Virus record (IMG/VR): IMGVR_UViG_3300030107_006644
Span: 141,518-205,517 of that record
Length of the DNA: 64,000 nucleotides
Direction: 5' to 3' (one strand)
The notes under the pieces are model-generated. The model ran no database searches. It worked only from the letters and a program-made list of their open reading frames with translations, and had not been told where the DNA came from. How positions within the stretch are numbered: position 1 is the stretch's first letter; each line of letters begins with the position of its first letter. Below are positions 1-56,951 of this stretch, in pieces. Position numbers and translations under genes: made by a program.

Positions 1-1332
1 AACACGGCCGGAGACGGAACAACAACGGCTACAGTGTTGTCTCGCGCAATACTTACGCAGGCGCAAGCGTTCTTAACTGCCGGCTCATCGCCTATCGAAC
101 TTAAACGTGGCATAGATAAAGCTGTCGAAGTTATAAGCGATAGACTGTATAAACAGGCAAAGCCAATTTCCAGTCAAGAAGACATTGCACACGTTGCCAC
201 CATATCCGCTAACGGCGATAAGGTTATAGGACAACTGATAGCTACGGCAGTGGATGCGATTGGTAAGGATGGGGCAATCACAGTAGAGGAAGCTCGTTCC
301 TTGACTACGGCACTCGATATTGTGGAGGGCTTTCAACTAGGCAGTGGATTTGTATCCTCGTCTTTTATTACGGACGAGCGCCGTGGGGCTGTTCGGTACG
401 AAAACAGCTACGTGCTGGTTACGGATGGCACAATCGACACGGTGGATGAGTTGCTTCCTGTGCTTGAGGTCGTGGCTCGCGAGAACAGGCCGCTAGTCGT
501 TGTCTCCGAGAACATCGAGGGGCAAGCATTGGCCGCTCTGATAATGAATTCAGTACGAGGCACGTTGAAGGTAGCAGCTATCAAGGCGCCTAGATATGGC
601 GAAGAGCGCCGCAACATACTTAAGGATCTGTGTTATGCTGTGGGAGCAAAGTTCGTCTCACGCGAATCTGGAGTCGGACTCCGCGAAGTAAAGTTGGAGC
701 ATCTGGGCACATGCAAAAGTATTGAAGTCTTAAAAACCAACACCACAATTGTTGGCGGCGGCGGAAACTACGAAGCTTTAGAAAAGAGGATCGAATCACT
801 CAGGGTAGAGCTTTCGCAGACGGAGAACTTGCATGAGTGCGAGAGGTTACAAGAGAGAATTACACGTCTATCTTCTGGCGTTGCCATAATAAGGGTTGGC
901 GCGCCAACTGAAATTGAAATGGTAGAAAAGAAGCACAGAATTGAGGATGCATTAGAGGCTGTCCGCTCCGCTCAAGAGGAAGGCATCGTTCCCGGCGGAG
1001 GCACTGCGCTAATTAGAGCGGTGACCAACTTAGAGGTACAGACCGAAAACGAGACTCAAGCTCAAGGTGTTGAGATTGTTCGTCGCGCCTGTTCAGATCC
1101 TCTACGTCAGATGGCTATTAACGCTGGAGAATCTCCCGACATTGTGCAGGAGAAGGTTGAGGCTCTAGAGGATTCCGTCAGCGGATATGATTTTGCCGCT
1201 GGAGAAATCAAAGATTTGATCGAGGTGGGAATTATCGACCCAGTAAAGGTCACGCGAACCGCACTTGAGAACGCAGCCTCGGTAGCTAGTACCTTAATTA
1301 CGACAAATCATGCAATAATACAAGTTGATTAG
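1..1332 (+). CDS. groEL: Group I chaperonin GroEL/Cpn60-like, 5' truncated by the window edge
   Basis: Frame open from base 1 (NTAGDGTTTATV); AIIRVGAPTEIEMVEKKHRIEDAL, EEGIVPGGG, GIIDPVKVTRTALENAAS; no C-terminal GGM tail. Confidence 0.96.
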   Translation, partial: NTAGDGTTTATVLSRAILTQAQAFLTAGSSPIELKRGIDKAVEVISDRLYKQAKPISSQEDIAHVATISANGDKVIGQLIATAVDAIGKDGAITVEEARSLTTALDIVEGFQLGSGFVSSSFITDERRGAVRYENSYVLVTDGTIDTVDELLPVLEVVARENRPLVVVSENIEGQALAALIMNSVRGTLKVAAIKAPRYGEERRNILKDLCYAVGAKFVSRESGVGLREVKLEHLGTCKSIEVLKTNTTIVGGGGNYEALEKRIESLRVELSQTENLHECERLQERITRLSSGVAIIRVGAPTEIEMVEKKHRIEDALEAVRSAQEEGIVPGGGTALIRAVTNLEVQTENETQAQGVEIVRRACSDPLRQMAINAGESPDIVQEKVEALEDSVSGYDFAAGEIKDLIEVGIIDPVKVTRTALENAASVASTLITTNHAIIQVD

Positions 1333-4129: not shown

Positions 4130-4138
4130 ACTATTTAC
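4130..4138 (+). promoter_or_regulatory. CTATTTA late-promoter-like motif
   Basis: actatttac upstream of the 1746-aa gene. Confidence 0.5.
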
Positions 4139-4152
4139 ATAGTAGCCGCAAC

Positions 4153-7100
4153 GTGGAGCTTTATATGAAGAAGATTTACGAGGGCTGGCGACGTTATGTT
4201 AAGAGAGTTCAACTCGATGAGTCTCGCAAAGTTAAACGTTCGCAGCTCCAAGAAAATTTAGAAACACTGAACGAGATTTCTCGCGAAGTCTCAGACAGAA
4301 TATACAAATGGATGCGCGATGCATCGGTCATGGACTATTCGTTTGATGAATTGTTTGACGGTAAGATGCGCATGGCTATGCCGTTCGACTCTGAAGATGC
4401 GTTGAACCTTAAGAAGGTCGTCCGCGCACTCAAGAAAGACGGTTGGCAAGCCGGCGAAATGGTTCCGTGGGAAGGGGGCATGCACAGCGCCAACAAGTTC
4501 CCCACGCGCACGGTCAAACAGAAGAGACAAAGACTTGCAGACGAGGGCGGCGGCTTTTACGAAGAAGAGATCGAGGTCGCGGATCTGGGCCTTGCCAAGA
4601 GTTATGAAAAGGAAATACCCGCAGGCCCTCGCAAGGGAGAGATCATCCAGCGTACAGACAAGCTAGGAATGGGCAAAGCAATCGCCAAACTTGTTAAGGA
4701 GAAAAAGCTAGATAAAGAGTTGCTGGATTGGTGGCTTAAGAAACAAACTTATTATACAAAAGACAGGAACTGGACAGAGATCGAGGCATTGTTCGCCAAC
4801 ACTGAAGTGGATTATACTGTCATTATCTCGCGCCATCCAGTCGATGTACTCCGTATGAGTGATATTGGCAGCATCAGATCGTGCCACAGCGAGGGGCATA
4901 GTCACTTCCAATGCGCTGTGGCAGAAGCTAGGGGTCATGGACCCATCGCGTACCTTGTTCCGACGACAGAGTATGATAAACTCATGGCCGGCTTGTATGA
5001 GGAATATGATACTGCTGATGATCCTGAGTCGGCATACGATGTGAATCGATCCACCAGCAAATTACTTAAAGCACACGCAGTGTTCAAAGCAGAAGAATAT
5101 ATCAAAAATCACATTACGACCATACACTCTCGCTGGTCATCGATATACAAAATAATTGACAATATCAAAACTAGCAAGGACGAGGATATGCTTGAATTCG
5201 CAATCCAAGCAGTCTTCGATGCCGACCCTGTGTATGGAGAACTAGACCCTACCGTTCGCGGCTTGCTAACTGATCAAGCTGTGATGGACGCTGTGGTTGC
5301 CAAAGCCGAGGGCAAGGAATGGTCGCTCCGTCCAGACGACACGCAGGAAGACGAACCTGACGAACCTGAAGAAATCGGAGACATATCCAAGTTTGATGAT
5401 AAGGAAATCTTCAGAGACGGGCAGCGCGGAGTTAAAGGTATCGTTGCAAAGGGTCGCGTCAGGTTTAGAAAATTTGAAGATAGCGACTCGGATATGCAAT
5501 TTATTGCCCCAGAGCACAGAACATATGGTGCAGTTCCTCCCGGCTTTGTCAAGTCGATGGTCAAGTGGGCCGCAGAGAGCCAAGAGCAGACGTTTAGAGA
5601 CAACGGTTTTCTAGGCCGCCACCCAGAGCAGAGAGGCTTGCACGCCCCCAACTGGTACAGCCTGACTAGATATGGAGGATCGTATGAGGACACAGAAGAT
5701 GGGGATGTGCTGACGGCACTCTTTCAGCACTATGACTCGGAATTTAGTTCTTATAAGCTGGGTTGGAATGTCGATCATCACACCGAAGATGAGCAGGACA
5801 GCCTCGCCGAACAATATGAGCAGAGAGTCGACGATCTTAATGATTACGCGGCCAACAATTTGGGGCACTGCAGCACCCACGCCGAGGTTAATGATGACGG
5901 TGAAGAGCCCTATGTCTATGCCAGCGGAGACTTGTCAATCGAATTAAACCTTCTAGGCTGGGGCGGCTTGATGGAAGACTATGTTGGCACAAACTACTAT
6001 CAATCAAGAGGCGCCGATGAGGACGGCGACCCATATATTATTCCAAAGAGTTGGGGCGGTGATTATCAAAAGAGAAGACAATTTGAAAGAGCAATCGAAG
6101 ACAAGCTGGACATCTACTCGGAAGAGACGGATTGGGAGGTTAATGTTCAAAAAGGTGGAGCAATAGGTGAAAAGGGCCCAACAACAGTTTTAGAAGTGCG
6201 ATTTAGATTTAGCATGGAAGATGGTCACACTCCTGATGACTACGAGAACTTTATTGATTATCTTAAGTCCGATGTCGATGACAAATATGAGAACATTCGC
6301 GAAGGAATAAGGTTAGCACTGGTTGAAGAAGGGTACATGCTCAGAAACTACTTCGACAAGCTTAATTATGCAGCGACAGAAGATGACGAGGGAGAAGAGA
6401 TCGAGCCCGGCCCTACTCCAGCGGAGGAATTTGCTGGAAGTCTTCAGCACTTCGAATTCTATCCTCCATCGGATGATGGCGATGGCGAAATGTTGTTCGT
6501 GTCTCGCGGGCCCGGAAAGGTTAATTATATTACAACACCCACAATGATGCCCGCCTCGCTCCGAAAGCATGACAGAGCAACAGGCTGGACGGTGGCTGAT
6601 CTTGAGACAGCGTTTGGTGGCGAACGGTTCTCACTTGGATTCGGCACACCGCCGTCAGTCAAACACACAGGCCTTGGCATGCATAAGATAGCCATGGCCC
6701 TTAGCGACATACAAGAGGAAGCGGAAGCATATGCCGGCAGGCAATTGTCGCTTGACTTTGGGGAGAGATACGAGGCACCACCCGATCAGGATGTACTTCC
6801 AGACTTTGCAAAGAATGTGGAGTTCATAACCGTTCTTGCTACACCAACTGCTTCACAACAAGCGGGACTACCAGAGACAGGCGATAAGGACTCTAGACAT
6901 TTAGGTTTTGGGATCAGGGTTAAGATTCTTTCTGTTGATTCTGAACGCGAAATTAAAGGTGCAATTGCGTTTATGGAATATGTCGATAAGGAAATTAGGA
7001 CAATTGCCAGAGCATTTCAAAGTCTATGGGAACCCGCAATTGAAGAGGCTGAAGAAACAAAAAAGAAGGCGCAAGCCGCAGCAGTTAGCAAAGGCACGAT

Positions 7101-9393
7101 GGAGCAGCTTACAAACGCTCTCGACACTAAGGTGAGGAACATGCTCAACACCCCTAGGCCCGGTAATCCTGATTATCAGCCACCTCTTGTTGCTGTATTA
7201 AAGGCTTATATTGAGTGGGCCCACGCAGCATGGCCAGAAATGCACTTGCTTGAACGCAGAGTGCTTATAAATCAGTATTTGAGGCCGCTACAGCAGGGAA
7301 GTCTCGGCACATCAGCGGGTAATTTTGAGCCGAACAGCACTGGAAGCAGTCACTCTCCACTGCACTGGAAGCGAGCGGTTCAGCAAGCCCATCGCGAAGC
7401 CGGAGCCCCAGAAGCCGTGTGGGGCAGATATGATTGGTATGGTGATGCTGATTTTAGGGATATTATAGCGAAGCACCAAGCCGAGGCCGGCATTGACAGA
7501 GATGCAGAACTTGATGCAGATATTGAGCAGGCAGAGCGTGTGCAACAACAGCTATCACCTGAAGCTGACGCAGAACAGGAAGAGCCCATCGGCCTCGCAC
7601 GCTTAGGTACCGCACTCGACCGAGGTGGTGGAGGGCCGATTGTCAGGAGACACGGATCCGCCAATCCCCCCGAGCCCGAGGATTTGAGAGAGGCCATTCG
7701 GAAAGCGATAAGCGGAACTATTTACGGTAAAGGAGAAATCAAAGTGTCAAACAAAGACAAACTTAGAGAAGCAATTCGAGGAGCAATAAAACAAAAGCTA
7801 GACGAGAATTGGCTGCAGCGCGGGATGGCGTATGCAACTGGTCAAGGCGAAGAGTATGATCGCGATCAGACAGTCGCAAGAGAAAGCGAAGAAGCAAGAG
7901 AGCAAGGACTGCGTGGTCGGCCAGATCCAGATTATGAGCCACCTCCATATCTAGACAGAACATCGCAGTCAGGTCGACGCCCGAACGATATTTATGCCGG
8001 CTCCATTGCTGAACCAGATTACTTACCTGCAGAGTACGCCGGTTGGGAGCAGGGCGATGCAACCCCTTTCGAGCAAGATGTTCAAAATTGGTACCAGCTA
8101 GGCGGCCCGCTTGAAGTTGACGAATTTGGGTATCCAAGTGAAGACTACGAAGCTGGTACGAACTTCATGGCGGGCAGCGATCCTATGAGTGAATACTTTG
8201 TTGATCCTGTGGACAATCCTTACCTATACGATGCGATGACCGGCTGGTATGAAGGTGGCCTAGGCGACACTTGGACAGACCAGTTTGGAATGCAACGCGA
8301 TTGGGCACCCGAATTGCTTTATGGAGATCCGCGAAGGCATTTAGAGACCACACAACCGCCCGAAACGTGGCTTGATCCACTGGGCTCTATGGAAATACCT
8401 TGGCGAGGACGAGCCCCCGCTGAAGGCGAGTCGCACGACATTACACAAAACATACTCGATCAATACTTCGGTACGCACAACGACTTTGCCGGCCGTGTAC
8501 ACCCAGTGCACGGCGGCCGAAGCACTCATTTAGCTATCGATGCCGGCGGCAGAGTGGGCGATCCACTTTATGCTAGTTTGCCGGGCTACGCACACTTGCA
8601 ACGGCGCTATGGTGGGGGCGGTAACACTGTTGGCATGGTGTCCCTAGTCCCAGATCCTAATGATCCGACGCAACCCTACTACGTTGATCAGCGATACATG
8701 CACATGAGGTCTCACCCCGGCGGCTATACGACAAGAGGCCAACGAGTTGAGCCCGGTCAGTTAGTGGGTGAGCTTGGAGGCACCGGCACATCGACCACTG
8801 GACCTCATCTACATTGGAGCATGCAAGGTGGCGATCTTGGGACTGAATTGGGGGGCGGCGGAGTGAGGGTCGGGTTCGATCAGCCGGGAACCAGTCGAGC
8901 CCAGACAGACGCCTATTTCAATCCGCGAGTGGAGAGAGTTGCGCCTGTAAATCCGGGCCAACTGGCGACTCACTGGAAGTTCCCCGACAACAGCTATACC
9001 GTTCCAGATACATATCGGACTCCTTACATAAACCCTACGTTACTTAGCCCTGATATATGGAACTACTCCTATTACAACCCGCCCCCGATGCAGGGCCCTG
9101 CCCCGTACATACCGATAGGCCCCGGCGATCCGGGATGGTATCCAGAGCCGGGAGAAGAAGGCTACGGAGTACTGCGAGAAAATGCCCAGACCTCTGACTT
9201 AAAAGACGCAATTCGAGAAGCTATCAAATTAAAGGTTTCCACGAGTGAAGAGGCTCACCATGGTGGGTGCGATGCCTGCGAAACTTGCGGCGAGATGCAT
9301 GGTCCCGAAGAGCCTTGCGAATTGCCAACCTTAGAAGAGGCGATTAGGCAGGCGATACTTCGCAAAATAGGCAAGAAGGTTAAAGATAGATGA
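4153..9393 (+). CDS. Large probable virion/internal-head protein with C-terminal M23 (LytM) peptidase domain; likely start ATG 4165
   Basis: RYMHM...GQRVEPGQLVGELGGTGTSTTGPHLHWSM is the M23 signature; repeated (L)REAIR.AI helices; acidic. Confidence 0.8.
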   Translation: MELYMKKIYEGWRRYVKRVQLDESRKVKRSQLQENLETLNEISREVSDRIYKWMRDASVMDYSFDELFDGKMRMAMPFDSEDALNLKKVVRALKKDGWQAGEMVPWEGGMHSANKFPTRTVKQKRQRLADEGGGFYEEEIEVADLGLAKSYEKEIPAGPRKGEIIQRTDKLGMGKAIAKLVKEKKLDKELLDWWLKKQTYYTKDRNWTEIEALFANTEVDYTVIISRHPVDVLRMSDIGSIRSCHSEGHSHFQCAVAEARGHGPIAYLVPTTEYDKLMAGLYEEYDTADDPESAYDVNRSTSKLLKAHAVFKAEEYIKNHITTIHSRWSSIYKIIDNIKTSKDEDMLEFAIQAVFDADPVYGELDPTVRGLLTDQAVMDAVVAKAEGKEWSLRPDDTQEDEPDEPEEIGDISKFDDKEIFRDGQRGVKGIVAKGRVRFRKFEDSDSDMQFIAPEHRTYGAVPPGFVKSMVKWAAESQEQTFRDNGFLGRHPEQRGLHAPNWYSLTRYGGSYEDTEDGDVLTALFQHYDSEFSSYKLGWNVDHHTEDEQDSLAEQYEQRVDDLNDYAANNLGHCSTHAEVNDDGEEPYVYASGDLSIELNLLGWGGLMEDYVGTNYYQSRGADEDGDPYIIPKSWGGDYQKRRQFERAIEDKLDIYSEETDWEVNVQKGGAIGEKGPTTVLEVRFRFSMEDGHTPDDYENFIDYLKSDVDDKYENIREGIRLALVEEGYMLRNYFDKLNYAATEDDEGEEIEPGPTPAEEFAGSLQHFEFYPPSDDGDGEMLFVSRGPGKVNYITTPTMMPASLRKHDRATGWTVADLETAFGGERFSLGFGTPPSVKHTGLGMHKIAMALSDIQEEAEAYAGRQLSLDFGERYEAPPDQDVLPDFAKNVEFITVLATPTASQQAGLPETGDKDSRHLGFGIRVKILSVDSEREIKGAIAFMEYVDKEIRTIARAFQSLWEPAIEEAEETKKKAQAAAVSKGTMEQLTNALDTKVRNMLNTPRPGNPDYQPPLVAVLKAYIEWAHAAWPEMHLLERRVLINQYLRPLQQGSLGTSAGNFEPNSTGSSHSPLHWKRAVQQAHREAGAPEAVWGRYDWYGDADFRDIIAKHQAEAGIDRDAELDADIEQAERVQQQLSPEADAEQEEPIGLARLGTALDRGGGGPIVRRHGSANPPEPEDLREAIRKAISGTIYGKGEIKVSNKDKLREAIRGAIKQKLDENWLQRGMAYATGQGEEYDRDQTVARESEEAREQGLRGRPDPDYEPPPYLDRTSQSGRRPNDIYAGSIAEPDYLPAEYAGWEQGDATPFEQDVQNWYQLGGPLEVDEFGYPSEDYEAGTNFMAGSDPMSEYFVDPVDNPYLYDAMTGWYEGGLGDTWTDQFGMQRDWAPELLYGDPRRHLETTQPPETWLDPLGSMEIPWRGRAPAEGESHDITQNILDQYFGTHNDFAGRVHPVHGGRSTHLAIDAGGRVGDPLYASLPGYAHLQRRYGGGGNTVGMVSLVPDPNDPTQPYYVDQRYMHMRSHPGGYTTRGQRVEPGQLVGELGGTGTSTTGPHLHWSMQGGDLGTELGGGGVRVGFDQPGTSRAQTDAYFNPRVERVAPVNPGQLATHWKFPDNSYTVPDTYRTPYINPTLLSPDIWNYSYYNPPPMQGPAPYIPIGPGDPGWYPEPGEEGYGVLRENAQTSDLKDAIREAIKLKVSTSEEAHHGGCDACETCGEMHGPEEPCELPTLEEAIRQAILRKIGKKVKDR

Positions 9394-11432
9394 GTTATGA
9401 AAAGATAGCTAACGATTGGAAGAGGTTTATGTCCGAGGATCTGAATCCCGACATAGAGGCTGCAATAGATCGCTCAAGTTCAACAGAGCCATCACCGGCA
9501 ACGGAAGAGGACTTTGAATCGTATGCTGCTGTGGCCGATTATGTTAGTGGTCAAGGCCACGCTCCAGAGGGAATACTCGGCTTTGCCGATCAGTATGACG
9601 CTAGCAAATATCCCGATTGGAACGATAGGGTCGCTCGAACGGACGCTGAGCTGGAATCCCTGCCCGGTCTTGCTCCTCGCGAAACAAGGTTGCCGGGCGT
9701 ACATCGAGGTCCGTACAGGGAAGACGCAGCTATATTTAGCGCCGCTGAATCCGAGGCTGCAGCCGAGGAAGAAAGGTTACGTCAGCGTAGAGAAGAGAAC
9801 GATTACTGGAGAGACCAGCACGCTATCTCGCAAGGCTATGAAAGCTGGAATGACATGGCAGAGAACGACGAAGATTTGAGGGCAACCCTGCAGGTCCATC
9901 AGGACCGTGAGGACGAGCGCGAGCGCAGACAAGCTTACGATGAGGAATCTATGGAACATATGATTGCTCTAGGAATGTATGAACGCCCTGAAGAGCCGGA
10001 GCCGGGCCGTCGATATGGCTTTGAGGATTGGCGAGATGAAAACCCTAATGTTGCAAACGATTTCCGGGCCACAGAACAAGTTATGGGCTCCTCTTTCCTG
10101 CAGACAGTCGACTGGGAAGGTATGTCCGATCAGGATTACGAGACGCTGCAAAGAGCGGAGTATTTGTTTTTGATGTTTGGAGGATCCGGCGCCCGTCGAG
10201 GAAATGCCGGCCACGCTCATCATGAGGATTCGGAAGAAGCAGACTCAATTTTAAGAGAATTGTATGGCACAGTGTACGATGAGATGCTTGAGCGAGAAGA
10301 TTTGGGTAAAATGGTTCGACCTGTCACAACTAGGGTCAGGGATCGCGATACCGGCGTTGTCGAGAGAGTTAAGCAGTGGCAAGAGTGTTCGGATGATGAT
10401 ATGCAACAGCATCCGACGACTGACGGTGATCGCGCCGGTCGCGGAACAGGCTGCAGACCCCAACTTTACAACTCTGTTGACACTAGGGATCGATACATAG
10501 ACAATGCGATGGGGCAGAACAAGTATCACTGGAGTGCAGCAACGATCACCTTTCTCAACAGACATATGGCTCCGAACTTTCGAGGACATCAGGGACACTT
10601 TGCATACATGGGCGATGCTAAACGTGCTCTAGATTCTGAAGAGTACGAAGTAGGAGATTATGTAGCTCACCGGCCCGTCGATGATGAAACCGGGACTACT
10701 CACGGACAAATAACAATAGGAGATGTCGGTGTGGGCTCTTCGTTATGTAGTCCAAGAGGAGGTACTGGTGATGGCTGGTCAAATATTGGGTCTGCCAATC
10801 ACTGTGATATTGTGATCGCAAAGGATGTAGATGGAAACCTTGTCACAATGGGGGGCAATATTGCTAACGGAAGACTGGGGATCCGCGTTTTTACTTCTGA
10901 TGTTAGGGCATACCTCAAGCAGCACGGCAGGCAGCCCGGCGTAGATGTTGTTAGTTGGACTCGCCCTTCGATGGTGATCGCGCAAGCGCAACAACCCGGA
11001 CCAGCCTCCGATGCATTGGCTTTAGCCGAACCTCTTCAAGAATCTAAGGACACAACAACTTTACGAACCGCAATCCGCTCTGCACTTAAGTTATTAAAAG
11101 AAGATTATATTCAAAATGTTTACGAGGCCCAGTGTTCGCTCAACATTCATAAGAAAAAGGGTGGCGATAAAAAACAAACCTTAACAGACATTCGTGGCAT
11201 CCCCGGTGTTACAATTGTTAGTGTGGTTCCCGGTACAAGTCGAGAGATGGGGCATACCTTTATAACAACGCTGTCGGTTAAGTTTGAACTCAACAATAAT
11301 CTGCCGCCGCGTAATTACATTAAGAGGGTTCTGGTTCCTCACTTACGAAGAGTAGAGGGCGTCAGCAATATTCAGGTAAAGCGAATAACTAAGTTATCTA
11401 ATGTGCAGGGGGAAGAAGATTATCATGGCTGA
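9390..11432 (+). CDS. Probable virion protein with DUF2272/CHAP-like amidase domain
   Basis: HWSAATITF...HCDIVIA...MGGNI; N-terminal WKRFMSE; LRTAIRSALKLLKE helix. Confidence 0.75.
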   Translation: MSYEKIANDWKRFMSEDLNPDIEAAIDRSSSTEPSPATEEDFESYAAVADYVSGQGHAPEGILGFADQYDASKYPDWNDRVARTDAELESLPGLAPRETRLPGVHRGPYREDAAIFSAAESEAAAEEERLRQRREENDYWRDQHAISQGYESWNDMAENDEDLRATLQVHQDREDERERRQAYDEESMEHMIALGMYERPEEPEPGRRYGFEDWRDENPNVANDFRATEQVMGSSFLQTVDWEGMSDQDYETLQRAEYLFLMFGGSGARRGNAGHAHHEDSEEADSILRELYGTVYDEMLEREDLGKMVRPVTTRVRDRDTGVVERVKQWQECSDDDMQQHPTTDGDRAGRGTGCRPQLYNSVDTRDRYIDNAMGQNKYHWSAATITFLNRHMAPNFRGHQGHFAYMGDAKRALDSEEYEVGDYVAHRPVDDETGTTHGQITIGDVGVGSSLCSPRGGTGDGWSNIGSANHCDIVIAKDVDGNLVTMGGNIANGRLGIRVFTSDVRAYLKQHGRQPGVDVVSWTRPSMVIAQAQQPGPASDALALAEPLQESKDTTTLRTAIRSALKLLKEDYIQNVYEAQCSLNIHKKKGGDKKQTLTDIRGIPGVTIVSVVPGTSREMGHTFITTLSVKFELNNNLPPRNYIKRVLVPHLRRVEGVSNIQVKRITKLSNVQGEEDYHG

Positions 11433-12162
11433 TTATTATGATAAGTGGAAACGCTTTATAGCAGAGCGAAAACAGGCGCCGCACCAAATCTACTGTGATA
11501 TGGATGGCGTTTTGGTAGACTTCGTTCGCGGTGCTCTTGTATCTATTAACGAGGATGTTAATAACGCCAAGCTTTCCGACAAGAAAGAGACAGGCGGGAT
11601 GACTGATCTTGGCCATCTTAGACGCGCCATGAAACGAGAAGGTGTGGACACCGTAACCGAAGAGCATATTGAAAAATTTGCAGGTGGACACTCTAAAGTG
11701 AGAAAATACGCCATAAGACATATGTATGCCAGCTTGTCTGATGATGTAGACTTCTGGGCTAATTTGCCTTGGATGGAGGGTGGTCGTGAGTTGTGGGACT
11801 CGATCAAAAAGTATGAACCTTATATTTTAACTGCGCCTATGGGCCCCGGCTCTGAAGAGGGCAAGAGAAGGTGGATTCGCAGAAATCTTTCTCCGTCGCC
11901 CAAAAAGATATTCATGTCTCACGACAAGTTTAAGTGGGCAACAGATAGCGGTGGAAACGCCAATATCTTAATAGACGACTTTATGACCAATATTGGCCCA
12001 TGGAGAGAGAACGGTGGCATAGCTGTCCATCACGATGCAACCGACCTGCAGGAAACTTACGCCGAACTGTTAAGAAACGGCATTGAGGTATTGCGAGCCC
12101 CCGAGAGTCATGAGGAAGATCCCATGTCGTCTATGCACGATGACGACGAGGATGTTATATAA
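11425..12162 (+). CDS. HAD-family 5'(3')-deoxyribonucleotidase-like protein
   Basis: IYCDMDGVLVDF motif I, ILTAP, LIDD, W...GGIAVHH; ATG 11425 overlaps the upstream stop. Confidence 0.88.
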   Translation: MADYYDKWKRFIAERKQAPHQIYCDMDGVLVDFVRGALVSINEDVNNAKLSDKKETGGMTDLGHLRRAMKREGVDTVTEEHIEKFAGGHSKVRKYAIRHMYASLSDDVDFWANLPWMEGGRELWDSIKKYEPYILTAPMGPGSEEGKRRWIRRNLSPSPKKIFMSHDKFKWATDSGGNANILIDDFMTNIGPWRENGGIAVHHDATDLQETYAELLRNGIEVLRAPESHEEDPMSSMHDDDEDVI

Positions 12163-12265: not shown

Positions 12266-13081
12266 ATGGGTCTAATGTCGAAAGCTATCACGATTTTTAC
12301 CACAGCTATGATGAGTGGTTGCGTACAAGTTGGTAGCACTGACCCCGTTGTTGTTAGCCCGACATTACCAAATGCACATTTTTGCGAAGCTGGTAGCGAG
12401 GTAAACAGAGAGGTACAATCCGCACCCTCCAGAAGACTCGCAAAGATAGCGACGAAGACAAGAAACGCAGCAGTTATGATACACCACCTCGACGGCTCAC
12501 GTCGAGGTTCTGGCGTGTATATGTCTTACGACAACCATCACTTAGTTTTAACCTCTGCTCACGTTGTGCAGGGCGGCCCACCGATAGTGAGAGTGACCAC
12601 GCATACCGGAGAGTCTGTTGTTGCACCTGTGGTTGTTGCGGCTCTTTCACATACAGAAGACTACGCCGTTCTCTTGATCGAGGAACCCTTGTCTTCTGCT
12701 ACAGCGATGCCATTAAAGATCCGCCAGAACTCTAGAAGCGGGATTGTCGGCGAGTCGATAGTTTACTCTGGTTCTCCCGGCCACCACGAACTTCTAACTC
12801 TTTACGGAAACGTGTCTGGTGTTGCTGCGAACGAGAATTTAATAGTACACTCCTATGCTTGGATGGGGGCTTCTGGCTCCGGTGTATTTGATGACAGAGG
12901 AAACCTTGTTGGCATACTGAGAGCTATAGACGTGAATGACGGCATAGTGGTGCCTCAACTGAATGAAGATATGGTCTGGGTTGCGCCACTGACAAGCGTA
13001 GACTTGCAGAGATTATCGCTGGTTCTGGAAATTTATGATCTAGCGAGTGAGGTAGATGAATTAAACATGCCGCAGAGATAG
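12266..13081 (+). CDS. Trypsin-like serine protease, probable lipoprotein
   Basis: LTSAHV (His), EDYAV (Asp), GASGSG (Ser); N-terminal hydrophobic stretch ending SGC. Confidence 0.88.
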   Translation: MGLMSKAITIFTTAMMSGCVQVGSTDPVVVSPTLPNAHFCEAGSEVNREVQSAPSRRLAKIATKTRNAAVMIHHLDGSRRGSGVYMSYDNHHLVLTSAHVVQGGPPIVRVTTHTGESVVAPVVVAALSHTEDYAVLLIEEPLSSATAMPLKIRQNSRSGIVGESIVYSGSPGHHELLTLYGNVSGVAANENLIVHSYAWMGASGSGVFDDRGNLVGILRAIDVNDGIVVPQLNEDMVWVAPLTSVDLQRLSLVLEIYDLASEVDELNMPQR

Positions 13082-13101: not shown

Positions 13102-14136
13102 GTGAAACAAGTTAAAGCATTTAAGATGTTGATGATGCTGCCACTGTTGTTCTTTACCTCTTGCTTATCAGTGGATTATAGAATGACCGGCGAAGGAGAG
13201 ACATCCGGCGAAAGCCAAATTATCGAGGTGCCAGTTTACATATTGGTAGAGGTGCCGGGCGAAACTGAATATGGGGAAATCTGGGTAGACTCTTTTGACC
13301 AACCTCAGAGCGTTGACGGTGTAGACATTCTATGGGTCATCGACACATCCGGTTCGATGTATAGGTACGACCCCGAGTTGATGGCTGGTATCGAGGCTAT
13401 GCTAGAGGCCTTACCAGAGACAGGATGGCGACTAGCTATGGTAAGCAACGATCCAACCAAGGCTTCTGTCGAGGCGCAGTTTCCTTTGGTGCCGGGCGAC
13501 GACATTGGTGACGCGATGGATATGTACAATGCCATGGGGCGCGGAGGAAGAGAAGAAGGCTTCGATGCGGCCTATGAGTATATCGTAAATAATTCTTATG
13601 CCTCCACATGGCTACGTCCAGATGCCGCTTTGTTAGTTGTTTTCGTCTCGGATGAAGAAGAGCAGAGCGACGATCACTTTACAGACATCGCTGATTTTAA
13701 GGCGTGGTATGGCTCTCAGCGAGGAGGCTCTGCATTTCTGGCTAGTATCAACAATGTTGCACAAGCAGACTCGGTATGTGATAACCCGCCAAGTTCTATG
13801 GATATTGGCGACAGATATATGGAGGCAACCAATTATTTTAGTGGAGTCGTTGTAGACATTTGCGCTGAAGATTGGGCCCCCGGCGTACAGGATGCGTCAA
13901 ACCGTCTGGAGCCATATGAGCATATAGAGTTAACATATGTGGTGAGCGATGAGTCCACTATCCGAGTTTTTGTCAACGGAGCGTTGAACTGGGATTGGTA
14001 CTATCAGGCGTCTGACAATACCGTGTATTTCACTGTGATTCCGGCAGGCAATGATCATGTGGATGTTGCCTATCATTATGATCCGGACGATCCGTATGGA
14101 AATGGTTCGGGAGACACGGGTGATACGGGAAGTTAA
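13102..14136 (+). CDS. vWA-domain lipoprotein
   Basis: DILWVIDTSGSM MIDAS, VVFVSDEEEQS; lipobox-like FTSC; C-terminal GDTGDTGS. Confidence 0.85.
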   Translation: MKQVKAFKMLMMLPLLFFTSCLSVDYRMTGEGETSGESQIIEVPVYILVEVPGETEYGEIWVDSFDQPQSVDGVDILWVIDTSGSMYRYDPELMAGIEAMLEALPETGWRLAMVSNDPTKASVEAQFPLVPGDDIGDAMDMYNAMGRGGREEGFDAAYEYIVNNSYASTWLRPDAALLVVFVSDEEEQSDDHFTDIADFKAWYGSQRGGSAFLASINNVAQADSVCDNPPSSMDIGDRYMEATNYFSGVVVDICAEDWAPGVQDASNRLEPYEHIELTYVVSDESTIRVFVNGALNWDWYYQASDNTVYFTVIPAGNDHVDVAYHYDPDDPYGNGSGDTGDTGS

Positions 14137-14955: not shown

Positions 14956-15392
14956 TGGTGAGAAACAAGAAGCATGCAAAAAGCGCATGGATCGCAAATA
15001 GTTCTTGCGTAGCAAAGCCTTGGGGAGAAGAGATTTCGTGGGCCGCTTTGCCGTCAATACATGGGAAGATGCTTTATATCGAGGCGGGAACTAGAACCAG
15101 CTACAAATATCACAAGAGCAAAAATGAGGTTCTCTTTGTGTTGAAAGGTGAGGCAAAAGTACAGTTTGGCTCCGAATACACACTTGAAGATCCGATTGGC
15201 TTTCCCTTAAAGCACGCATTACTTGAGCCCGGCCAGTGTCTTAACGTGCAGTCAGGTTGCCCATACCGCATCGAGGCGATTACGGATTGCGAAATTGTAG
15301 AGATAAGCGATGGGCGCTCCGGAGAATCAGATAAAGTCAGGATCGAAGATGATTATGGGAGAGAAGCAACCTCCAAAGCGCGGAAAGAATAA
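14952..15392 (+). CDS. Cupin (mannose-6-phosphate isomerase type II C-terminal-like)
   Basis: KPWGEE, S..YH..K.E..FV..G, VRIEDDYGR. Confidence 0.85.
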   Translation: MMVRNKKHAKSAWIANSSCVAKPWGEEISWAALPSIHGKMLYIEAGTRTSYKYHKSKNEVLFVLKGEAKVQFGSEYTLEDPIGFPLKHALLEPGQCLNVQSGCPYRIEAITDCEIVEISDGRSGESDKVRIEDDYGREATSKARKE

Positions 15393-15728
15393 ATGAGTAA
15401 CAACAGCATGGAACTGATAACAGCGGGCGACGAAGATTTAAAGCCAAAGAAGCCTAGTAATCGCGCCCCCGAAGGTATACGGACCTTTACTGTCTGTCGC
15501 CAGCACGATGAGACTGGTATATCTGGGGAAGGCGTAGTTATTGAAGGCGCGACGTTCGCCACAGGCCATACGGTTATACACTGGCTCACTCCGGCACCCC
15601 GTGGATCAATTGCATTCTTTGATGCTTTTGATGACTTTATCAAGATTCACGTTACCAGCCATCCGAGCAACAACACCATTATCACGTTTGAAGATGGCGA
15701 ACAGACTATTTACGAAGGTAAGAGTTAG
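15393..15728 (+). CDS. Hypothetical phage protein
   Basis: 111 aa; DETGISGEGVV.EG..F..G.TVIHW. Confidence 0.75.
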   Translation: MSNNSMELITAGDEDLKPKKPSNRAPEGIRTFTVCRQHDETGISGEGVVIEGATFATGHTVIHWLTPAPRGSIAFFDAFDDFIKIHVTSHPSNNTIITFEDGEQTIYEGKS

Positions 15729-15749
15729 TAAGAGAGGTTCGTTTGCGTT

Positions 15750-15998
15750 TTGACTCAACACAACAAGTTTAATATTGGTGACCTCGTAAAGCTAGTACCG
15801 GCGGCAATAGGGTATCCAATGTTTGATGATGCAAAGGAAGCACTTGGTGTTGGCATTGTTATAGAACAGAGGATGCAGGCTCCAGAATGGGGAGATCCGT
15901 CCGGTATTCCCACCTTAATGTATCGTGTGATGTGGAGTGGTACAAATACGAAAAGATGGGAATTCCCCAGTGATTTAGTTAAAGTCATAGATAAATAG
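15750..15998 (+). CDS. MKVGDLV-family SH3/KOW-like protein
   Basis: FNIGDLVKL...GVGIVIE...YRVMW...DLVKVI. Confidence 0.7.
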   Translation: MTQHNKFNIGDLVKLVPAAIGYPMFDDAKEALGVGIVIEQRMQAPEWGDPSGIPTLMYRVMWSGTNTKRWEFPSDLVKVIDK

Positions 15999-16001
15999 TA
16001 T

Positions 16002-16289
16002 GTGGAGTGCGAACTTACAACTGCTACTGTCGGCATCGGAGATTTGATTAGGTGGGTAAAGCCGCTCTACTATATACAGAATGGTAAAGAGTATACATTA
16101 GAAAACTGGAACTATGCGCTCGTTATTGAGGTTAATATCAAGGTCTACTCTACTTTGGTAGTGCGAAATTTAACCTTGCAACTGCTTGGCGAACATAGCT
16201 CAATGCGTATAGACATATCTCTTGACATGTTGACTGATCTTGGGAAGATAGAGAAATTATGCGAAAGAAAATGGATTTGTATAGGTTGA
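16002..16289 (+). CDS. MKVGDLV-family SH3/KOW-like protein
   Basis: VGIGDLIRW...ALVIEV. Confidence 0.65.
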   Translation: MECELTTATVGIGDLIRWVKPLYYIQNGKEYTLENWNYALVIEVNIKVYSTLVVRNLTLQLLGEHSSMRIDISLDMLTDLGKIEKLCERKWICIG

Positions 16290-16370
16290 GTAGAACTACT
16301 TAAATTAAAGGTTCTCTCGAACCGCCGCGCGAAACTTCGCGGAAAATTTTTCAATGCGAGGTGCCAATGA

Positions 16371-16661
16371 GTGTCAATCAGGAGATTCCGAATCGGAGAT
16401 TACATACGCTGGGAGTCTGGAATCGAGGCATTCAGCGCAAGTGCGTCGGGCATTGTCCACCCAATCGAGTTCAGATACGACTATGGCATCGTGGTAGACA
16501 TAGCAGAAGGCAATCCGAAGGAGAACGCATCGGACGTTATCATCGCGTATTGTGTCGAAAAGAGAGATTGGATTGTTGCTCACGTTGACGATGCAGAATA
16601 TCGCATGGAACTGGTCAGCCGAGCACCAGAAAAGCCCATTGGTAAAGTCGATGGGAGATGA
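16371..16661 (+). CDS. MKVGDLV-family SH3/KOW-like protein
   Basis: FRIGDYIRW...YGIVVDI...MELVS. Confidence 0.7.
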   Translation: MSIRRFRIGDYIRWESGIEAFSASASGIVHPIEFRYDYGIVVDIAEGNPKENASDVIIAYCVEKRDWIVAHVDDAEYRMELVSRAPEKPIGKVDGR

Positions 16662-17049
16662 CAAGACGATAGAAGAGAAGCCGCCTGATGTGTTCGTAGG
16701 CGACATGATAAAGTGGAAGGAAGCCGAGTTCTCATATACGCCAAGCGACTACAAGGTTAAACACTACGTCGGAATAGTCGTAGAGGTGAAGGTGCCGGAA
16801 GCTACAGTGCAGGATATAATGTGGAACATATACTATAGTCACAGCTACGACCCATTGGTAGACGAGTATTACCGCAAGAACTTCTGGGACCAAAGATATG
16901 AAGAGGTGCCATGGATTAAGGTGTTGACTATTCAAGGCAAGACCGGAAAGAAGGTGTTTCGCTACCTTTCGATGGAGGATGAGTTTGAAGTCCTATCGCG
17001 AGCTAGTCTGCTGATCCTGCCAACCACGGAGAAGGAGCATGAAGAGTAA
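16651..17049 (+). CDS. MKVGDLV-family SH3/KOW-like protein with insertion
   Basis: VFVGDMIKW...VGIVVEV...IKVL...FEVLS; start placed at ATG 16651. Confidence 0.65.
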   Translation: MGDDKTIEEKPPDVFVGDMIKWKEAEFSYTPSDYKVKHYVGIVVEVKVPEATVQDIMWNIYYSHSYDPLVDEYYRKNFWDQRYEEVPWIKVLTIQGKTGKKVFRYLSMEDEFEVLSRASLLILPTTEKEHEE

Positions 17050-17269
17050 CCCCGATGCTTATGACATTGGCGATTACGTCGAAATAATGGTGTGTCCGTC
17101 CATTGGTGGCGGTGTGGAAGTCTGCTACGGGATTGTAGTGGCTAGCTCATCAAAAAAAACGAGCTATTTAATATACTTGTTTGACAAAAATCGCTGGAAG
17201 TGGTACAATGATTTTGAGCTTACACTGATGAGCGCAGCGGAAGAGGCAAATGGAACTAGGAAAAAATAG
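17039..17269 (+). CDS. MKVGDLV-family SH3/KOW-like protein
   Basis: YDIGDYVEI...YGIVV...YLIYL...ELTLMS. Confidence 0.7.
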   Translation: MKSNPDAYDIGDYVEIMVCPSIGGGVEVCYGIVVASSSKKTSYLIYLFDKNRWKWYNDFELTLMSAAEEANGTRKK

Positions 17270-17573
17270 CGGCGAAAGGCTACAAGTTTACAAATACACG
17301 GCAGAAGATGAGAACGGACAGATAGTGTTTTACTACACATACCCCGAGAAAAGCGAGAGAATCGTCAAGAGGGTTGAAGACAAGATTAAACAAGATGTGA
17401 TCGTGTTCGATATATTTCCGGGCTTAATCAATGGTGACGAAGAACTAGAAGAGGCAATATGGGTGACAACGCAAATACAAACTCCCATGTATCTTCCGGC
17501 AGGCATGGGCGTAACTATGCATGACTTTGGAACCATACTATACGGAATCGCAGAAGATGACGAAGACTCTTGA
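17250..17573 (+). CDS. Acidic hypothetical protein
   Basis: 107 aa; its stop TGA lies inside the first TTGACA of promoter element P1. Confidence 0.7.
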   Translation: MELGKNSGERLQVYKYTAEDENGQIVFYYTYPEKSERIVKRVEDKIKQDVIVFDIFPGLINGDEELEEAIWVTTQIQTPMYLPAGMGVTMHDFGTILYGIAEDDEDS

Positions 17574-17624
17574 CATGTTGCTGACAACTTTTCCATTGAC
17601 AGGCGGGTCGTGATGAGCTATATT
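17570..17624 (+). promoter_or_regulatory. Triple-box sigma70-type promoter element P1
   Basis: TTGACA 17570, CTGACA 17581, TTGACA 17596, 17 bp, TATATT 17619. Confidence 0.9.
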
Positions 17625-17647
17625 ATTAGGGTAAACAGGAGGAAGCC

Positions 17648-17923: not shown

Positions 17924-17933
17924 GGAGATAAAC

Positions 17934-18556: not shown

Positions 18557-18607
18557 CATTTACTTGACAAAGTTTTCCTTGACTTTGCGCTCACTGTAGA
18601 GTATATT
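18553..18607 (+). promoter_or_regulatory. Triple-box promoter element P2
   Basis: TTGACA 18553, TTGACA 18564, TTGACT 18579, 17 bp, TATATT 18602. Confidence 0.9.
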
Positions 18608-18613
18608 ATTTGT

Positions 18614-56336: not shown

Positions 56337-56951
56337 ATGAAAGATATTTATTGGTTAAAATCATCAACTGAAGACGAAGAAGAAGGTCCGAGTGCTAGCT
56401 CAAGCGACGACAACAATATAGTTTCCAGTCTAAATAACAACATCTACTTCTATTCAGAAGTAACTAGAGCTAAAAACTTGCAGCTAAATAAAAAACTGAT
56501 GACTTTGGGAGTTTCATTGGTTAACCGAAGCAATTCGCTTGGAGCATCACCACCACCGCCGATTAATTTGCATATTAACAGCTATGGAGGCAGTCTTTTT
56601 GCCGGATTTTCATCTGTTGATTATGTATTAAACTGTCCTGTGCCAGTTCATTCAGTTATTGATGGCTGTGCTGCATCTGCAGCCACACTCTTTAGCGTTG
56701 TCGCAGAGAGGAGATTCATGCATAAGCACTCGTTTATGTTGATTCACCAGCTTTCTTCTGGAATGTGGGGAAATTATGAATCACTTAAAGATGATATGGA
56801 GAATTGCGATCTGCTGATGGAAACAATTCGAACTATTTATAGCGACCATACTAAAATTCCCAAGAAGATGCTCAATCAAATTTTGAAAAGAGATTTGTGG
56901 TTCGATGCGGAAACGTGTTTAAAGCATGGTTTGGTCGATGAAATTATTTAA
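56337..56951 (+). CDS. clpP: ClpP-like protease
   Basis: HINSYGGSLFAG, CAASAAT, MLIHQLS, RDLWFDAE.CL..GLVDEI. Confidence 0.9.
   Translation: MKDIYWLKSSTEDEEEGPSASSSDDNNIVSSLNNNIYFYSEVTRAKNLQLNKKLMTLGVSLVNRSNSLGASPPPPINLHINSYGGSLFAGFSSVDYVLNCPVPVHSVIDGCAASAATLFSVVAERRFMHKHSFMLIHQLSSGMWGNYESLKDDMENCDLLMETIRTIYSDHTKIPKKMLNQILKRDLWFDAETCLKHGLVDEII

What the first reader, a model, noticed from the sequence alone, without database searches (positions are those of the whole stretch)
7681..9393. Polyprotein-like virion proteins: cargo domains bracketed by repeated EAIR helices and LxE sites
Seen: in the 1746-aa protein the helix (D/K)LREAIR.AI occurs four times (about 7681, 7759, 9196, 9331), and the M23 region is bounded by KQKLDE and VLRE. 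Related helices with LxE ends recur in 9390 (LRTAIRSALKLLKE), 35934 (LEELIHKKLME, KLKKKLNE), 40539 (ILEE, RLLRE), 46456 (KLQE, QLNE), 49468 (KLLLE, HLSE, TLLE) and 52073 (KLIQE). Inference: shared head-assembly helices plus prohead-protease sites release independent effector domains, a plug-in cargo architecture.
Basis: partly seen in the sequence, partly recalled or inferred. Interest (0 to 1): 0.6.

Follow-up and report, generated by a model that had tools for sequence, protein, structure and literature searches.

The report
Address-tag helices bracketing phage cargo modules
A giant protein of an uncultured marine T4-like jumbo phage carries short conserved helices at the borders of its cell-wall-cutting module. 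These helices, and a related 14-residue N-terminal leader on many other genes, look like T4-style capsid-loading and cleavage tags, but no cleavage or packaging has been shown.

Summary
AIRxA[I/L] helices occur four times in the 1746-aa protein (window 7678-7725, 7756-7803, 9193-9240, 9325-9372) and once in the next gene (11055-11102), far above chance. They are kept at the protein level while their codons differ.

Three architectures among relatives show cargo being plugged in at these helices:
- a fused form;
- a split form with a stand-alone 111-aa C-terminal domain gene;
- the window's form, with a roughly 1.75-kb extra block bracketed by two helices.

The genome is a distant T4-like myovirus. 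It has a gp21-type prohead protease (outside the window), a gp23-type capsid protein with a T4-like propeptide, and a scaffold-like protein. 41 of 43 distinct helices contain an (L/I)xE, the T4 protease motif.

A stronger, unreported signal also emerged. Its cargo includes kinases, NUDIX and nucleotidases.

Packaging and cleavage are inferences by analogy with the T4 capsid targeting sequence.

Verdict: new variant of a known kind, interest about 0.6.

The parts
4130..4137 (+). ACTATTTA upstream motif, a putative late-type promoter element, 22 nt before the ORF.
   Evidence: There are 24 copies in the genome and 17 lie within 90 nt upstream of a start, against 9.4% expected by area. It also precedes the scaffold-like, adaptor and sheath genes and window genes 35934, 40539, 46456 and 52073.
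4153..9393 (+). Giant protein gene (P0001, 1746 aa as an ORF). The likely true start is the ATG at 4165, preceded by GGAG, giving 1742 aa.
   Evidence: Homologues begin MKKIYEGWR....
4165..4221 (+). N-terminal W-type leader MKKIYEGWRRYVKRVQLDE, ending in LDE; a candidate propeptide.
   Evidence: In the family, 58 of 74 members have (L/I)xE within 20 aa after the Trp, against 16.5% background.
4222..7600 (+). Conserved N-core of about 1150 aa, an orphan multidomain fold.
   Evidence: 95 metagenomic homologues of 970-2078 aa. AF2 pLDDT 75.8. No PDB fold match.
7678..7725 (+). Helix H1, EDLREAIRKAISGTIY.
7756..7803 (+). Helix H2, DKLREAIRGAIKQKLD(E|N). It is equivalent to the N-terminal leader of stand-alone M23 genes in relative G2.
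8524..8826 (+). M23 metallopeptidase domain. HxxxD (HLAID) and HxH (HLH) are present.
   Evidence: Pfam PF01551 35.4 bits, above the cut-off. PDB TagE and ShyA.
9193..9240 (+). Helix H3, SDLKDAIREAIKLKVS, preceded by VLRE.
9265..9339 (+). Cys/His knuckle (CDACETCGEMH...C) and the most conserved element of the tail, CELPTLEE|A. This is the junction with the C-terminal domain in fused relatives.
   Evidence: conservation 0.86.
9325..9372 (+). Helix H4, PTLEEAIRQAILRKIG, the C-terminal tail of the protein.
   Evidence: Many N-core-only relatives also end in such a helix.
9345..11096 (+). Block present in the window but absent from split relatives L153 and L154. It holds the H4 tail, the stop/start, a W-like leader, the cargo and H5.
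   Evidence: blastn homology stops near 9344 and resumes near 11097; the relatives have only about 60 nt there.
9390..11432 (+). Second gene (P0002, 680 aa): leader-like N-terminus, cargo, H5, then the C-terminal domain.
9399..9440 (+). W-like leader EKIANDWKRFMSED.
   Evidence: 17.8 bits.
10506..10868 (+). DUF2272-like stretch of the cargo, below Pfam's threshold.
   Evidence: PF10030 25.4 bits against a cut-off of 27. No PDB sequence match.
11055..11102 (+). Helix H5, TTLRTAIRSALKLLKE, directly joined to the C-terminal domain.
   Evidence: AF2 predicts a helix with pLDDT 55-72.
11103..11432 (+). C-terminal domain (CTD) with a ferredoxin-like beta-alpha-beta-beta-alpha-beta fold. It is fused to the giant protein in some relatives and is a stand-alone 111-aa gene in others.
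11419..12162 (+). 5'(3')-deoxyribonucleotidase-like gene with the leader MADYYDKWKRFIAE. In relative G1 it is fused behind another leader-bearing module.
56337..56951 (+). ClpP-like protease gene, an alternative candidate processing or degradation enzyme.

Best explanation
The AIR helices are short, selected peptide tags that mark the borders of cargo modules in a head-loaded giant protein of a distant T4-like jumbo phage. The 14-residue W leader, MKLLxENWRxF(L/I)xE, shares their register (L-x-E-x-hydrophobic-R-x-hydrophobic-I/L), though the two profiles do not cross-detect each other.

Proposed mechanism, by analogy with the T4 capsid targeting sequence:
1. The tags bind a component of the prohead core, so that the N-core, the M23 peptidoglycan peptidase, the window-specific cargo and the ferredoxin-like CTD are built into the prohead.
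2. The gp21-type prohead protease then cuts at the (L/I)xE sites that lie in or next to the tags. Candidate sites are LDE|S after the N-terminal leader, KLDE|N after H2, and the highly conserved ELPTLEE|A before the CTD.
3. The pieces are packaged with the DNA and ejected into the host, where M23 would cut the cell wall.

Because each module carries its own tag, modules can be encoded as separate genes or strung together, and new ones can be inserted at a tag.

Shown: the repeat, its conservation, its position at module borders, the three architectures, the protease and T4-type head genes, and the enrichment of (L/I)xE.

Inferred: head location, binding to the core, cleavage and ejection.
For: 1. 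T4-type head module.
- The prohead protease (genome 72580-73254) hits phrog_207 at 5e-51 and T4 gp21 5jbl at 2e-19, with GELDHP and GISSRGLGS aligned to the chain's GELNAP/GVASRGLGS; I take these for the catalytic His and Ser motifs, from memory of gp21.
- The MCP is gp23-like. Its propeptide, LLSKWERTGLLEG...ELLRE|AS, resembles my recollection of T4 gp23's propeptide; the T4 sequence was not fetched here.
- A scaffold-like gene with 16 (L/I)xE sites lies just upstream of the MCP.

2. The T4 protease cuts at (L/I)xE and removes 10-20-residue CTS propeptides. Alt is cut at ITE-6 and LTE-619 (PMC5694885, PMC9026906).

3. W leader.
- It occurs on at least 11 genes here with synonymous codon variation.
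- In 143 leaders defined only by residues 1-11, position 12 is L/I in 85% and position 14 is E in 84%; conservation ends at residue 14.

4. AIR helices.
- 41 of 43 contain (L/I)xE.
- They are as conserved as the M23 active site.
- They occur as N-terminal leaders of stand-alone M23 genes in G2.
- They occur as N- or C-terminal ends of other genes in related contigs.

5. The G2 M23 genes also end in RRFKILAGIK. This is the C-terminal motif of the scaffold-like protein here and in Flavobacterium phage immuto.

6. Fusion and fission at tags.
- The CTD is fused, stand-alone, or carries inserted cargo.
- The nucleotidase is fused behind an internal W leader in G1.

7. The ACTATTTA upstream motif is shared with structural genes.
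Against: - There are no proteomic or structural data, so neither head location nor cleavage has been observed.
- The gene lies far from the head module, next to GroEL and secreted lipoprotein genes.
- 7 of 17 helices in the three genomes lack Glu at the third position; (L/I)xE is a short motif, and the 43 helices are not phylogenetically independent.
- Residues after the putative cut sites are not enriched for the small residues that I recall at T4 sites.
- The W and AIR profiles do not cross-detect each other, so their equivalence rests on a shared register and on equivalent positions.
- A complex prediction of H1-H2 with the scaffold-like protein gave no answer.
- Many W-leader cargos are ordinary nucleotide-metabolism enzymes, which could equally act in the cytoplasm.
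Confidence: 0.5

Rival explanations
1. The helices are docking or oligomerisation elements of an uncleaved multidomain virion or ejection protein, comparable to large lysin-bearing phage proteins. They hold domains or subunits together; for example, the C-terminal H4 would keep the split-off CTD attached. The (L/I)xE content would be incidental to Glu-rich amphipathic helices.
For: - Many N-core-only relatives simply end in one such helix after a flexible linker. This suits a docking peptide and cannot be a 'linker'.
- The split forms end in H4 exactly where the CTD was detached.
- AF2 predicts H5 as a helix abutting the CTD.
- No cleavage has been shown.
Against: - It does not explain why the same helix type serves as the N-terminal leader of stand-alone M23 genes.
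- It does not explain why the leader class ends sharply in (L/I)xE.
- It does not explain why covalent linkage of the modules is dispensable.
- H5 is not confidently packed; pLDDT is 55-72 against about 95 for the CTD.
Confidence: 0.25
2. The helices are cationic amphipathic membrane- or DNA-binding segments that help the M23 hydrolase and its partners reach or disturb the cell envelope, or that bind packaged DNA. They would not be assembly tags.
For: - H4 (AIRQAILRKIGKKVKDR) and the terminal helices of relatives (KIRAKIRRIIKEAE, VIREAIRRKLRSTLK) are strongly basic and amphipathic.
- The neighbouring cargo is a cell-wall peptidase.
Against: - By my own count, H1-H3 are close to neutral.
- The same register occurs in the W leader on kinases, NUDIX and nucleotidases, which have no envelope role.
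- This reading does not explain the conserved Glu.
Confidence: 0.1
3. The helices matter mainly as recombination linkers. Conserved coding stretches promote module shuffling, as proposed for conserved ends of T-even internal-protein genes, and have little function as peptides.
For: The borders of the window-specific 1.75-kb block fall in or next to H4 and H5. Fusion and fission events map to tags.
Against: Copies share residues but not codons (the same holds for the W leader). DNA homology is therefore too short and weak to drive recombination, while amino-acid conservation across relatives of 50-80% identity argues for selection on the peptide.
Confidence: 0.07
4. The tags are degradation or chaperone signals read by the phage's own ClpP-like protease or GroEL, timing the life of early proteins rather than loading the capsid. 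The W leader resembles what I recall as a ClpX N-terminal recognition class (Met-basic-three hydrophobic-x5-hydrophobic); this is a recollection, not tested here.
For: The genome encodes a ClpP-like protease (window 56337-56951) and GroEL just upstream of the giant gene. The cargo enzymes look cytoplasmic.
Against: - It does not account for internal and C-terminal copies.
- It does not account for the conserved (L/I)xE.
- It does not account for the sharing of a scaffold-type C-terminal motif by AIR-led M23 genes.
- It does not account for the late-type upstream motif.
Confidence: 0.08

Closest known systems
T4 capsid targeting sequence (CTS) on internal proteins IPI-III and Alt, processed by prohead protease gp21
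   Same: - A short N-terminal peptide ends in (L/I)xE.
- It sits on otherwise unrelated proteins.
- The gp21-family protease, gp23-type capsid and scaffold are present.
- The cargo genes are variable and clustered.
- Alt shows that both ends of a protein can carry removable peptides (PMC9026906, PMC5694885, PMC3012670).
   Different: - The sequence is different and longer: 14 residues with invariant Trp-Arg.
- There are many more tagged genes per genome (at least 11) and the cargo is largely enzymes.
- A second helix type (AIR) is used internally, at N-termini and at C-termini.
- Tagged modules are concatenated in a 1746-2877-aa protein.
- Nothing has been shown experimentally.
Long propeptides and ejection proteins of giant phages phiKZ and SPN3US, processed by an S80 protease at (S/A/G)xE
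   Same: Jumbo myovirus heads carry many processed internal proteins. Paralogues share conserved N-terminal peptides with cleavage motifs, and several sites per protein occur (PMC5694885).
   Different: - Here the protease is closer to T4 gp21.
- The motif is (L/I)xE.
- The tags are short helices, not propeptides of more than 100 residues.
- The N-core family has no match in cultured phages.
Virion-associated peptidoglycan hydrolases carried on large phage proteins (M23 domains in tape-measure or tail proteins)
   Same: An M23 domain is embedded in a very large phage protein. PHROG hits fall on the M23 segment of tape-measure proteins and endolysins.
   Different: There is no similarity outside the M23 segment. 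The N-terminal leader and the module tags point to the head rather than the tail; this is inferred.
Cargo-loading peptides of encapsulins and C-terminal targeting tails of HK97-type proteases and scaffolds
   Same: Short terminal peptides act as portable addresses that load unrelated cargo into an HK97-fold shell. The C-terminal LAGIK motif shared by the scaffold-like protein and cargo here is of that style.
   Different: The sequence and the system are different. This is a resemblance of principle only.

Membership tests
T4-type CTS / internal-protein system | A gp21-family (S77) prohead protease is encoded by the phage. | tested here: met
   Genome 72580-73254: phrog_207 5e-51; PDB 5jbl 2.2e-19 with His and Ser motifs kept. 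The gene lies outside the window.
T4-type CTS / internal-protein system | A gp23-type major capsid protein with a cleavable N-terminal propeptide, plus a scaffold core. | tested here: met
   MCP: phrog_138 3.5e-70 and PDB T4 gp23 hits at about 1e-29. The propeptide holds (L/I)xE sites and looks T4-like from memory; there is a scaffold-like gene upstream. Cleavage itself was not tested.
T4-type CTS / internal-protein system | A short N-terminal peptide ending in (L/I)xE, shared by otherwise unrelated proteins. | tested here: met
   W leader. AIR leader on G2 M23 genes.
T4-type CTS / internal-protein system | The peptide is necessary and sufficient for packaging into the head and is removed by the protease. 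| not testable with these tools
   Needs virion proteomics or reporter fusions. The complex prediction gave no answer.
Viral polyprotein (one chain cut into independent proteins) | Proteolytic release of the domains. | not testable with these tools
   There are only indirect hints: modules exist as separate genes in relatives, and (L/I)xE sits at the borders.
Peptidase M23 (PF01551) | Profile match above the gathering score, with the HxxxD and HxH zinc motifs. | tested here: met
   35.4 bits against 28.7. HLAID and HLH are in the sequence. TagE and ShyA hits.
DUF2272 (PF10030) | Profile match above the gathering score. | tested here: not met
   25.4 bits against 27, so only 'DUF2272-like'. No PDB match.
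Tape measure protein | A long, mostly helical protein encoded between the tail tube/chaperone genes and the baseplate genes. | tested here: not met
   PHROG tape-measure hits cover only the M23 segment. The AF2 model is mixed alpha/beta and multidomain. The neighbours are GroEL and enzyme genes.

The most novel reading that the evidence does not exclude
A large clade of uncultured marine T4-like jumbo phages uses sequence-readable 'zip codes' to load a big, fast-changing set of enzymes and lysins into the capsid for injection. The zip codes are the 14-residue W leader, the AIR helix and a scaffold-type C-terminal LAGIK tail. The giant protein would be a true polyprotein, cut by the gp21-like protease into the N-core, the M23 lysin, extra cargo and the CTD. 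If so, the injected effector repertoire of these phages could be read directly from metagenomes: more than 140 distinct cargo proteins in 1 Mb of contigs.
Probability: 0.35. Interest if true: 0.78.

Novelty: new variant of a known kind. Interest (0 to 1): 0.6.

Why it matters
Proteins packed in a phage head and injected with the DNA act first in an infection. They counter host defences and take over the cell. They are hard to recognise from sequence, and outside T4 and a few giant phages almost nothing is known about them.

If these tags are loading signals, three things would follow:
- They would give a simple way to list injected proteins in an abundant but uncultured group of marine phages.
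- They would show how new cargo is added by plugging tagged modules into existing genes.
- They would offer compact tags for packaging foreign proteins into phage heads, as the T4 CTS already does.

Tried and rejected
- Whole-protein searches of the giant protein against 50,697 phage records found nothing, by megablast or tblastn.
- PHROG and Pfam scans found no family for the N-core or for window proteins 35934, 40539, 46456, 49468 and 52073.
- The AF2 model of the N-core had no convincing fold match. The best Foldseek E-value was 0.037; the best VIA-align Z was 6.2, on helical pieces only.
- The ESM Atlas feature search gave no usable hit.
- The word search with the second gene returned only itself.
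- The complex prediction of H1-H2 with the N- and C-terminal parts of the scaffold-like protein gave 'no answer' (score 0.00). This is evidence neither for nor against binding.
- The trypsin-like protease next to the locus (window 12266-13081) was considered as the processing enzyme. I set it aside because it and its vWA neighbour have lipoprotein-type signal peptides.
- The T4 late promoter TATAAATA is not used: 3 copies, none upstream of genes.
- The W leader is absent from the nearest cultured relative, Flavobacterium phage immuto.
- The W and AIR profiles do not detect each other.
- Three literature searches found no description of these tags.
Full report
**What the window is**

The window is the last 64 kb of a 205,517-bp IMG/VR virus record, and essentially all plausible genes lie on the + strand. 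Family scans of the rest of the genome show a distant T4-like myovirus:
- large terminase at 67176-68762;
- portal at 68769-70817, gp23-like major capsid protein at 87606-89516 and tail sheath at 93527-97021;
- baseplate wedge protein at 24260-26068.

The capsid protein's nearest cultured relatives are Flavobacterium phage immuto, Microcystis phage Mel-JY01 and Rhodothermus phage RM378, at about 40-46% identity.

It exists at genome 72580-73254, outside the window. It matches phrog_207 at 5e-51 and T4 gp21 (PDB 5jbl) at 2e-19, with GELDHP and GISSRGLGS aligned to the chain's GELNAP and GVASRGLGS. I take these for the catalytic His and Ser motifs from memory of gp21.

The capsid protein's N-terminus reads LLSKWERTGLLEG...ELLRE|AS. 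This resembles my recollection of T4 gp23's propeptide (LLNKWKPLLEGEG...FLTE|AE); the T4 sequence was not fetched here. A 421-aa helical, Pro/Gly/Met-rich protein with 16 (L/I)xE sites sits directly upstream of the capsid gene, in the place of a scaffold.

**The observation**

The 1746-aa ORF (window 4153-9393) probably starts at the ATG at 4165, behind a GGAG, as its homologues do. It contains four helices:
- H1 EDLREAIRKAISGTIY
- H2 DKLREAIRGAIKQKLD
- H3 SDLKDAIREAIKLKVS
- H4 PTLEEAIRQAILRKIG

The next gene (9390-11432) contains H5, TTLRTAIRSALKLLKE.

AIR.A[ILV] occurs nowhere else in the genome's ORFs except for one unrelated hit. A profile built from 43 distinct helices of the family finds 18 hits of at least 5 bits in three related genomes, against 0.35 in shuffled proteomes. 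The copies share residues but mostly not codons. In ten relatives the helices score 0.64-0.86 conservation, the indel-rich linkers 0.3-0.45, and the M23 catalytic motifs about 0.65. The helices are therefore selected peptides, not generic coiled coil and not recent DNA repeats.

The M23 domain (aa 1458-1558) passes Pfam's threshold, keeps HxxxD and HxH, and matches the TagE and ShyA endopeptidases in the PDB.

**Relatives show the plug-in pattern**

The first 1150 residues (the N-core) define a family of at least 95 metagenomic proteins of 970-2078 aa. None has a source name beyond 'hypothetical protein', apart from one labelled for its M23 part. Four kinds of architecture occur:
- Many members are the N-core followed only by a flexible linker and one terminal AIR-like helix, for example ...VLREAIRRAVLKSLNA* or ...KIRAKIRRIIKEAE*.
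- Others are the N-core plus a roughly 105-aa C-terminal domain (CTD).
- Another group ends instead in a further domain closing with ELPVFFSYQKQV*.
- Only the closer relatives carry M23 between helices.

Among the closer relatives there are three states.
1. Fused. N-core, H, H, M23, H3, Cys knuckle, ELPTLEE, CTD. Examples are L017 at 1720 aa and L018 at 2877 aa. L018 has an extra stretch of roughly 900 aa with no Pfam match, flanked by further helices.
2. Split. The big protein ends ...ELPTL(K/E)EAIRKAILKKIGK*, and the CTD is a stand-alone 111-aa gene starting at an ATGA overlap (MSYQNLNEDYVQNVYEAQC...).
3. The window. It is as in (2), but the CTD gene has gained about 560 residues between MSY and EDYIQNVYEAQC. 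The gain starts with a leader-like KIANDWKRFMSED and ends with ...PLQESKDTTTLRTAIRSALKLLKE.

At the DNA level, homology to the split relatives stops near 9344 and resumes near 11097. The relatives have only about 60 nt there. The borders of the extra block therefore fall at H4 and H5.

The CTD model (pLDDT about 95 in the domain) is a generic ferredoxin/ACT-like beta-alpha-beta-beta-alpha-beta fold. H5 is predicted helical but not confidently packed. The N-core model (pLDDT 75.8) has no convincing match among solved structures.

**A second, stronger tag**

Both genes of the finding, the neighbouring nucleotidase gene and at least eight other genes begin with MKLLxENWR(R/K)(F/Y)(L/I)xE or a variant. 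These include a NUDIX hydrolase and a kinase-like protein. Codons and upstream DNA differ between them.

In about 1 Mb of those loci there are 237 N-terminal leaders on cargo of 66-837 aa.

In 143 distinct leaders defined only by residues 1-11, the unconstrained position 12 is L/I in 85% and position 14 is Glu in 84%. After residue 14, conservation collapses.

Among 140 non-redundant cargos, Pfam finds protein kinases, NUDIX, P-loop kinases (AAA_33, Zeta-toxin-like), 5'-nucleotidases, GNAT acetyltransferases, exonucleases and RNA-repair-type domains. Most have no match.

This is the format of the T4 capsid targeting sequence. That sequence is a 10-residue N-terminal peptide whose residues 8 and 10 govern cleavage by gp21. 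It sits on otherwise unrelated internal proteins and is sufficient to load foreign proteins into the head (PMC9026906, PMC5694885, PMC3012670). The leader is absent from Flavobacterium phage immuto, and I found no paper that describes it.

**How the AIR helices relate to this**

The AIR helices share the leader's register, L-x-E-x-hydrophobic-R-x-hydrophobic-(I/L). One pattern with that register catches both kinds: 9 hits in this genome against 0.15 expected. The two profiles do not cross-detect, however.

In relative G2, two stand-alone M23 genes downstream of the giant gene start with MNKKQRLLRESIRRALKQQINEQ. The best local match between such a gene and the window's tail is this leader against H2 (LREAIRGAIKQKLDEN); the M23 domains themselves are only 26% identical.

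In other related contigs, AIR-like helices form the N- or C-termini of separate genes. 41 of 43 distinct helices contain (L/I)xE: 27 at the helix start and 11 as IRE. The junction ELPTLEE|A is the most conserved element of the tail, and an (L/I/M)xE precedes the CTD in nearly all lineages. After the N-terminal leader of the N-core family, 58 of 74 members have (L/I)xE within 20 residues, against 16.5% background.

Two further pointers to the head:
- The G2 M23 genes end in RRFKILAGIK. This is the C-terminal motif of the scaffold-like protein here (RMRMLAGIKK*) and in phage immuto (RWQKLAGIIK*).
- The giant gene is preceded by ACTATTTA. This strand-specific upstream motif is also found before the scaffold-like, adaptor and sheath genes.

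**Interpretation and limits**

The best reading is a T4-style loading and processing system in which each cargo module has its own short tag. Modules can then be separate genes or be strung into a polyprotein-like chain, and new cargo can be inserted at a tag.

Shown:
- the tags, their conservation and their border positions;
- the fusion and fission states;
- the T4-type protease and head genes;
- the (L/I)xE enrichment.

Inferred:
- that the proteins enter the head;
- that the tags bind the core;
- that the protease cuts at them.

Points against:
- The gene lies away from the head module.
- Several helices lack Glu at position 3.
- The helix set is not phylogenetically independent.
- Many W-leader cargos could be cytoplasmic enzymes.
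- The one complex prediction gave no answer.

The rivals are an uncleaved docking or oligomerisation role, membrane or DNA binding by basic amphipathic helices, recombination linkers, and degron or chaperone signals. They are weighed in the fields above.

The AIR profile does not find the listed helices in 35934, 40539, 46456 or 49468. 52073 gives 3.7 bits, near the shuffle noise, although similar N-terminal helices occur on proteins of similar length (252-284 aa) in other contigs; whether these are homologues of 52073 was not tested.

35934 and 46456 do share a distinct N-terminal helix, (L)(T/N)R(K/R)QLExL(I/V)(H/R)xKLxE. It also occurs in genome genes 55721 and 57225. 35934 additionally ends in a LAGIK-like tail. 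These may be a third tag class, but that is weaker evidence. The isolated LxE strings in 40539 and 49468 are not above chance; the background is 1.2% per position.

**Verdict**

This is a new variant of a known kind, the T4 CTS / internal-protein principle. It differs in having a previously undescribed and widespread leader, internal and terminal helix tags, and a polyprotein-like concatenation around an orphan 1150-aa core.

Noticed in passing
Genes whose starts lie at window 4165, 9390 and 11419; genome-wide starts at G000 58257, 60194, 115009, 118354, 118949, 120360, 120995 and 121453: A 14-residue N-terminal leader, MKLLxENWRxF(L/I)xE, sits on at least 11 otherwise unrelated genes (NUDIX, kinase-like, nucleotidase, unknowns).
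   Followed up: yes
G000 86309-87574 (C-terminus), 57225-57485 and window 35934-39134 (C-terminus); L018 genes 18631-20040 and 20037-21068; L033 10725-11966: A C-terminal motif, R(F/M/W)xxLAGI(K/R), is shared by the scaffold-like protein (also in Flavobacterium phage immuto) and by several non-scaffold proteins, including AIR-led M23 genes. It may be a second loading tag.
   Followed up: partly
Window 4130-4137; 24 sites genome-wide, for example upstream of window genes 35934, 40539, 46456 and 52073: The strand-specific upstream motif ACTATTTA has 17 of 24 copies within 90 nt of a gene start. The T4 motif TATAAATA is not used.
   Followed up: partly
Window about 15,700-25,000: More than a dozen paralogous small ORFs (about 55-110 aa) begin MKVGDLV... 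and end ...LEVIS.... This is a multi-copy small-protein family of unknown role.
   Followed up: no
Window 12266-13081 and 13102-14136: A trypsin-like serine protease (Trypsin_2) and a vWA-like protein (Pfam match below threshold) both have lipoprotein-type signal peptides. The pair is conserved next to the giant gene in relatives L153 and L154.
   Followed up: partly
Window 1-1332 and 56337-56951: The phage encodes GroEL (phrog_5725, 3.6e-115) a few kb upstream of the giant gene (ends 1332; gene starts 4153), and a stand-alone ClpP-like protease.
   Followed up: no
Window 9265-9320: A small Cys/His knuckle (C-x2-C-x2-C-G-x2-H...C) lies between H3 and ELPTLEE. It is present in some relatives and absent in others, and may bind zinc.
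   Followed up: no
G000 115009-117645 (878 aa) and its G1 homologue: This protein has a W-type helix at both ends: MPIYHDKWRQFLKEEEE... at the N-terminus and ...MHRMYKKWRSFIK* at the C-terminus. This recalls the double-ended processing of T4 Alt.
   Followed up: no
Window 49468-52047, N-terminus: MSKLKLLLEGGVAGHLAHLYDN shares the EGGVAGHL motif with the N-terminus of an unrelated 2078-aa metagenomic protein (P0101). Its meaning is unknown.
   Followed up: no
G000 15087-23465 (2792 aa) and 27552-39830 (4092 aa): Two further giant ORFs lie in the baseplate/tail region. They were not analysed.
   Followed up: no
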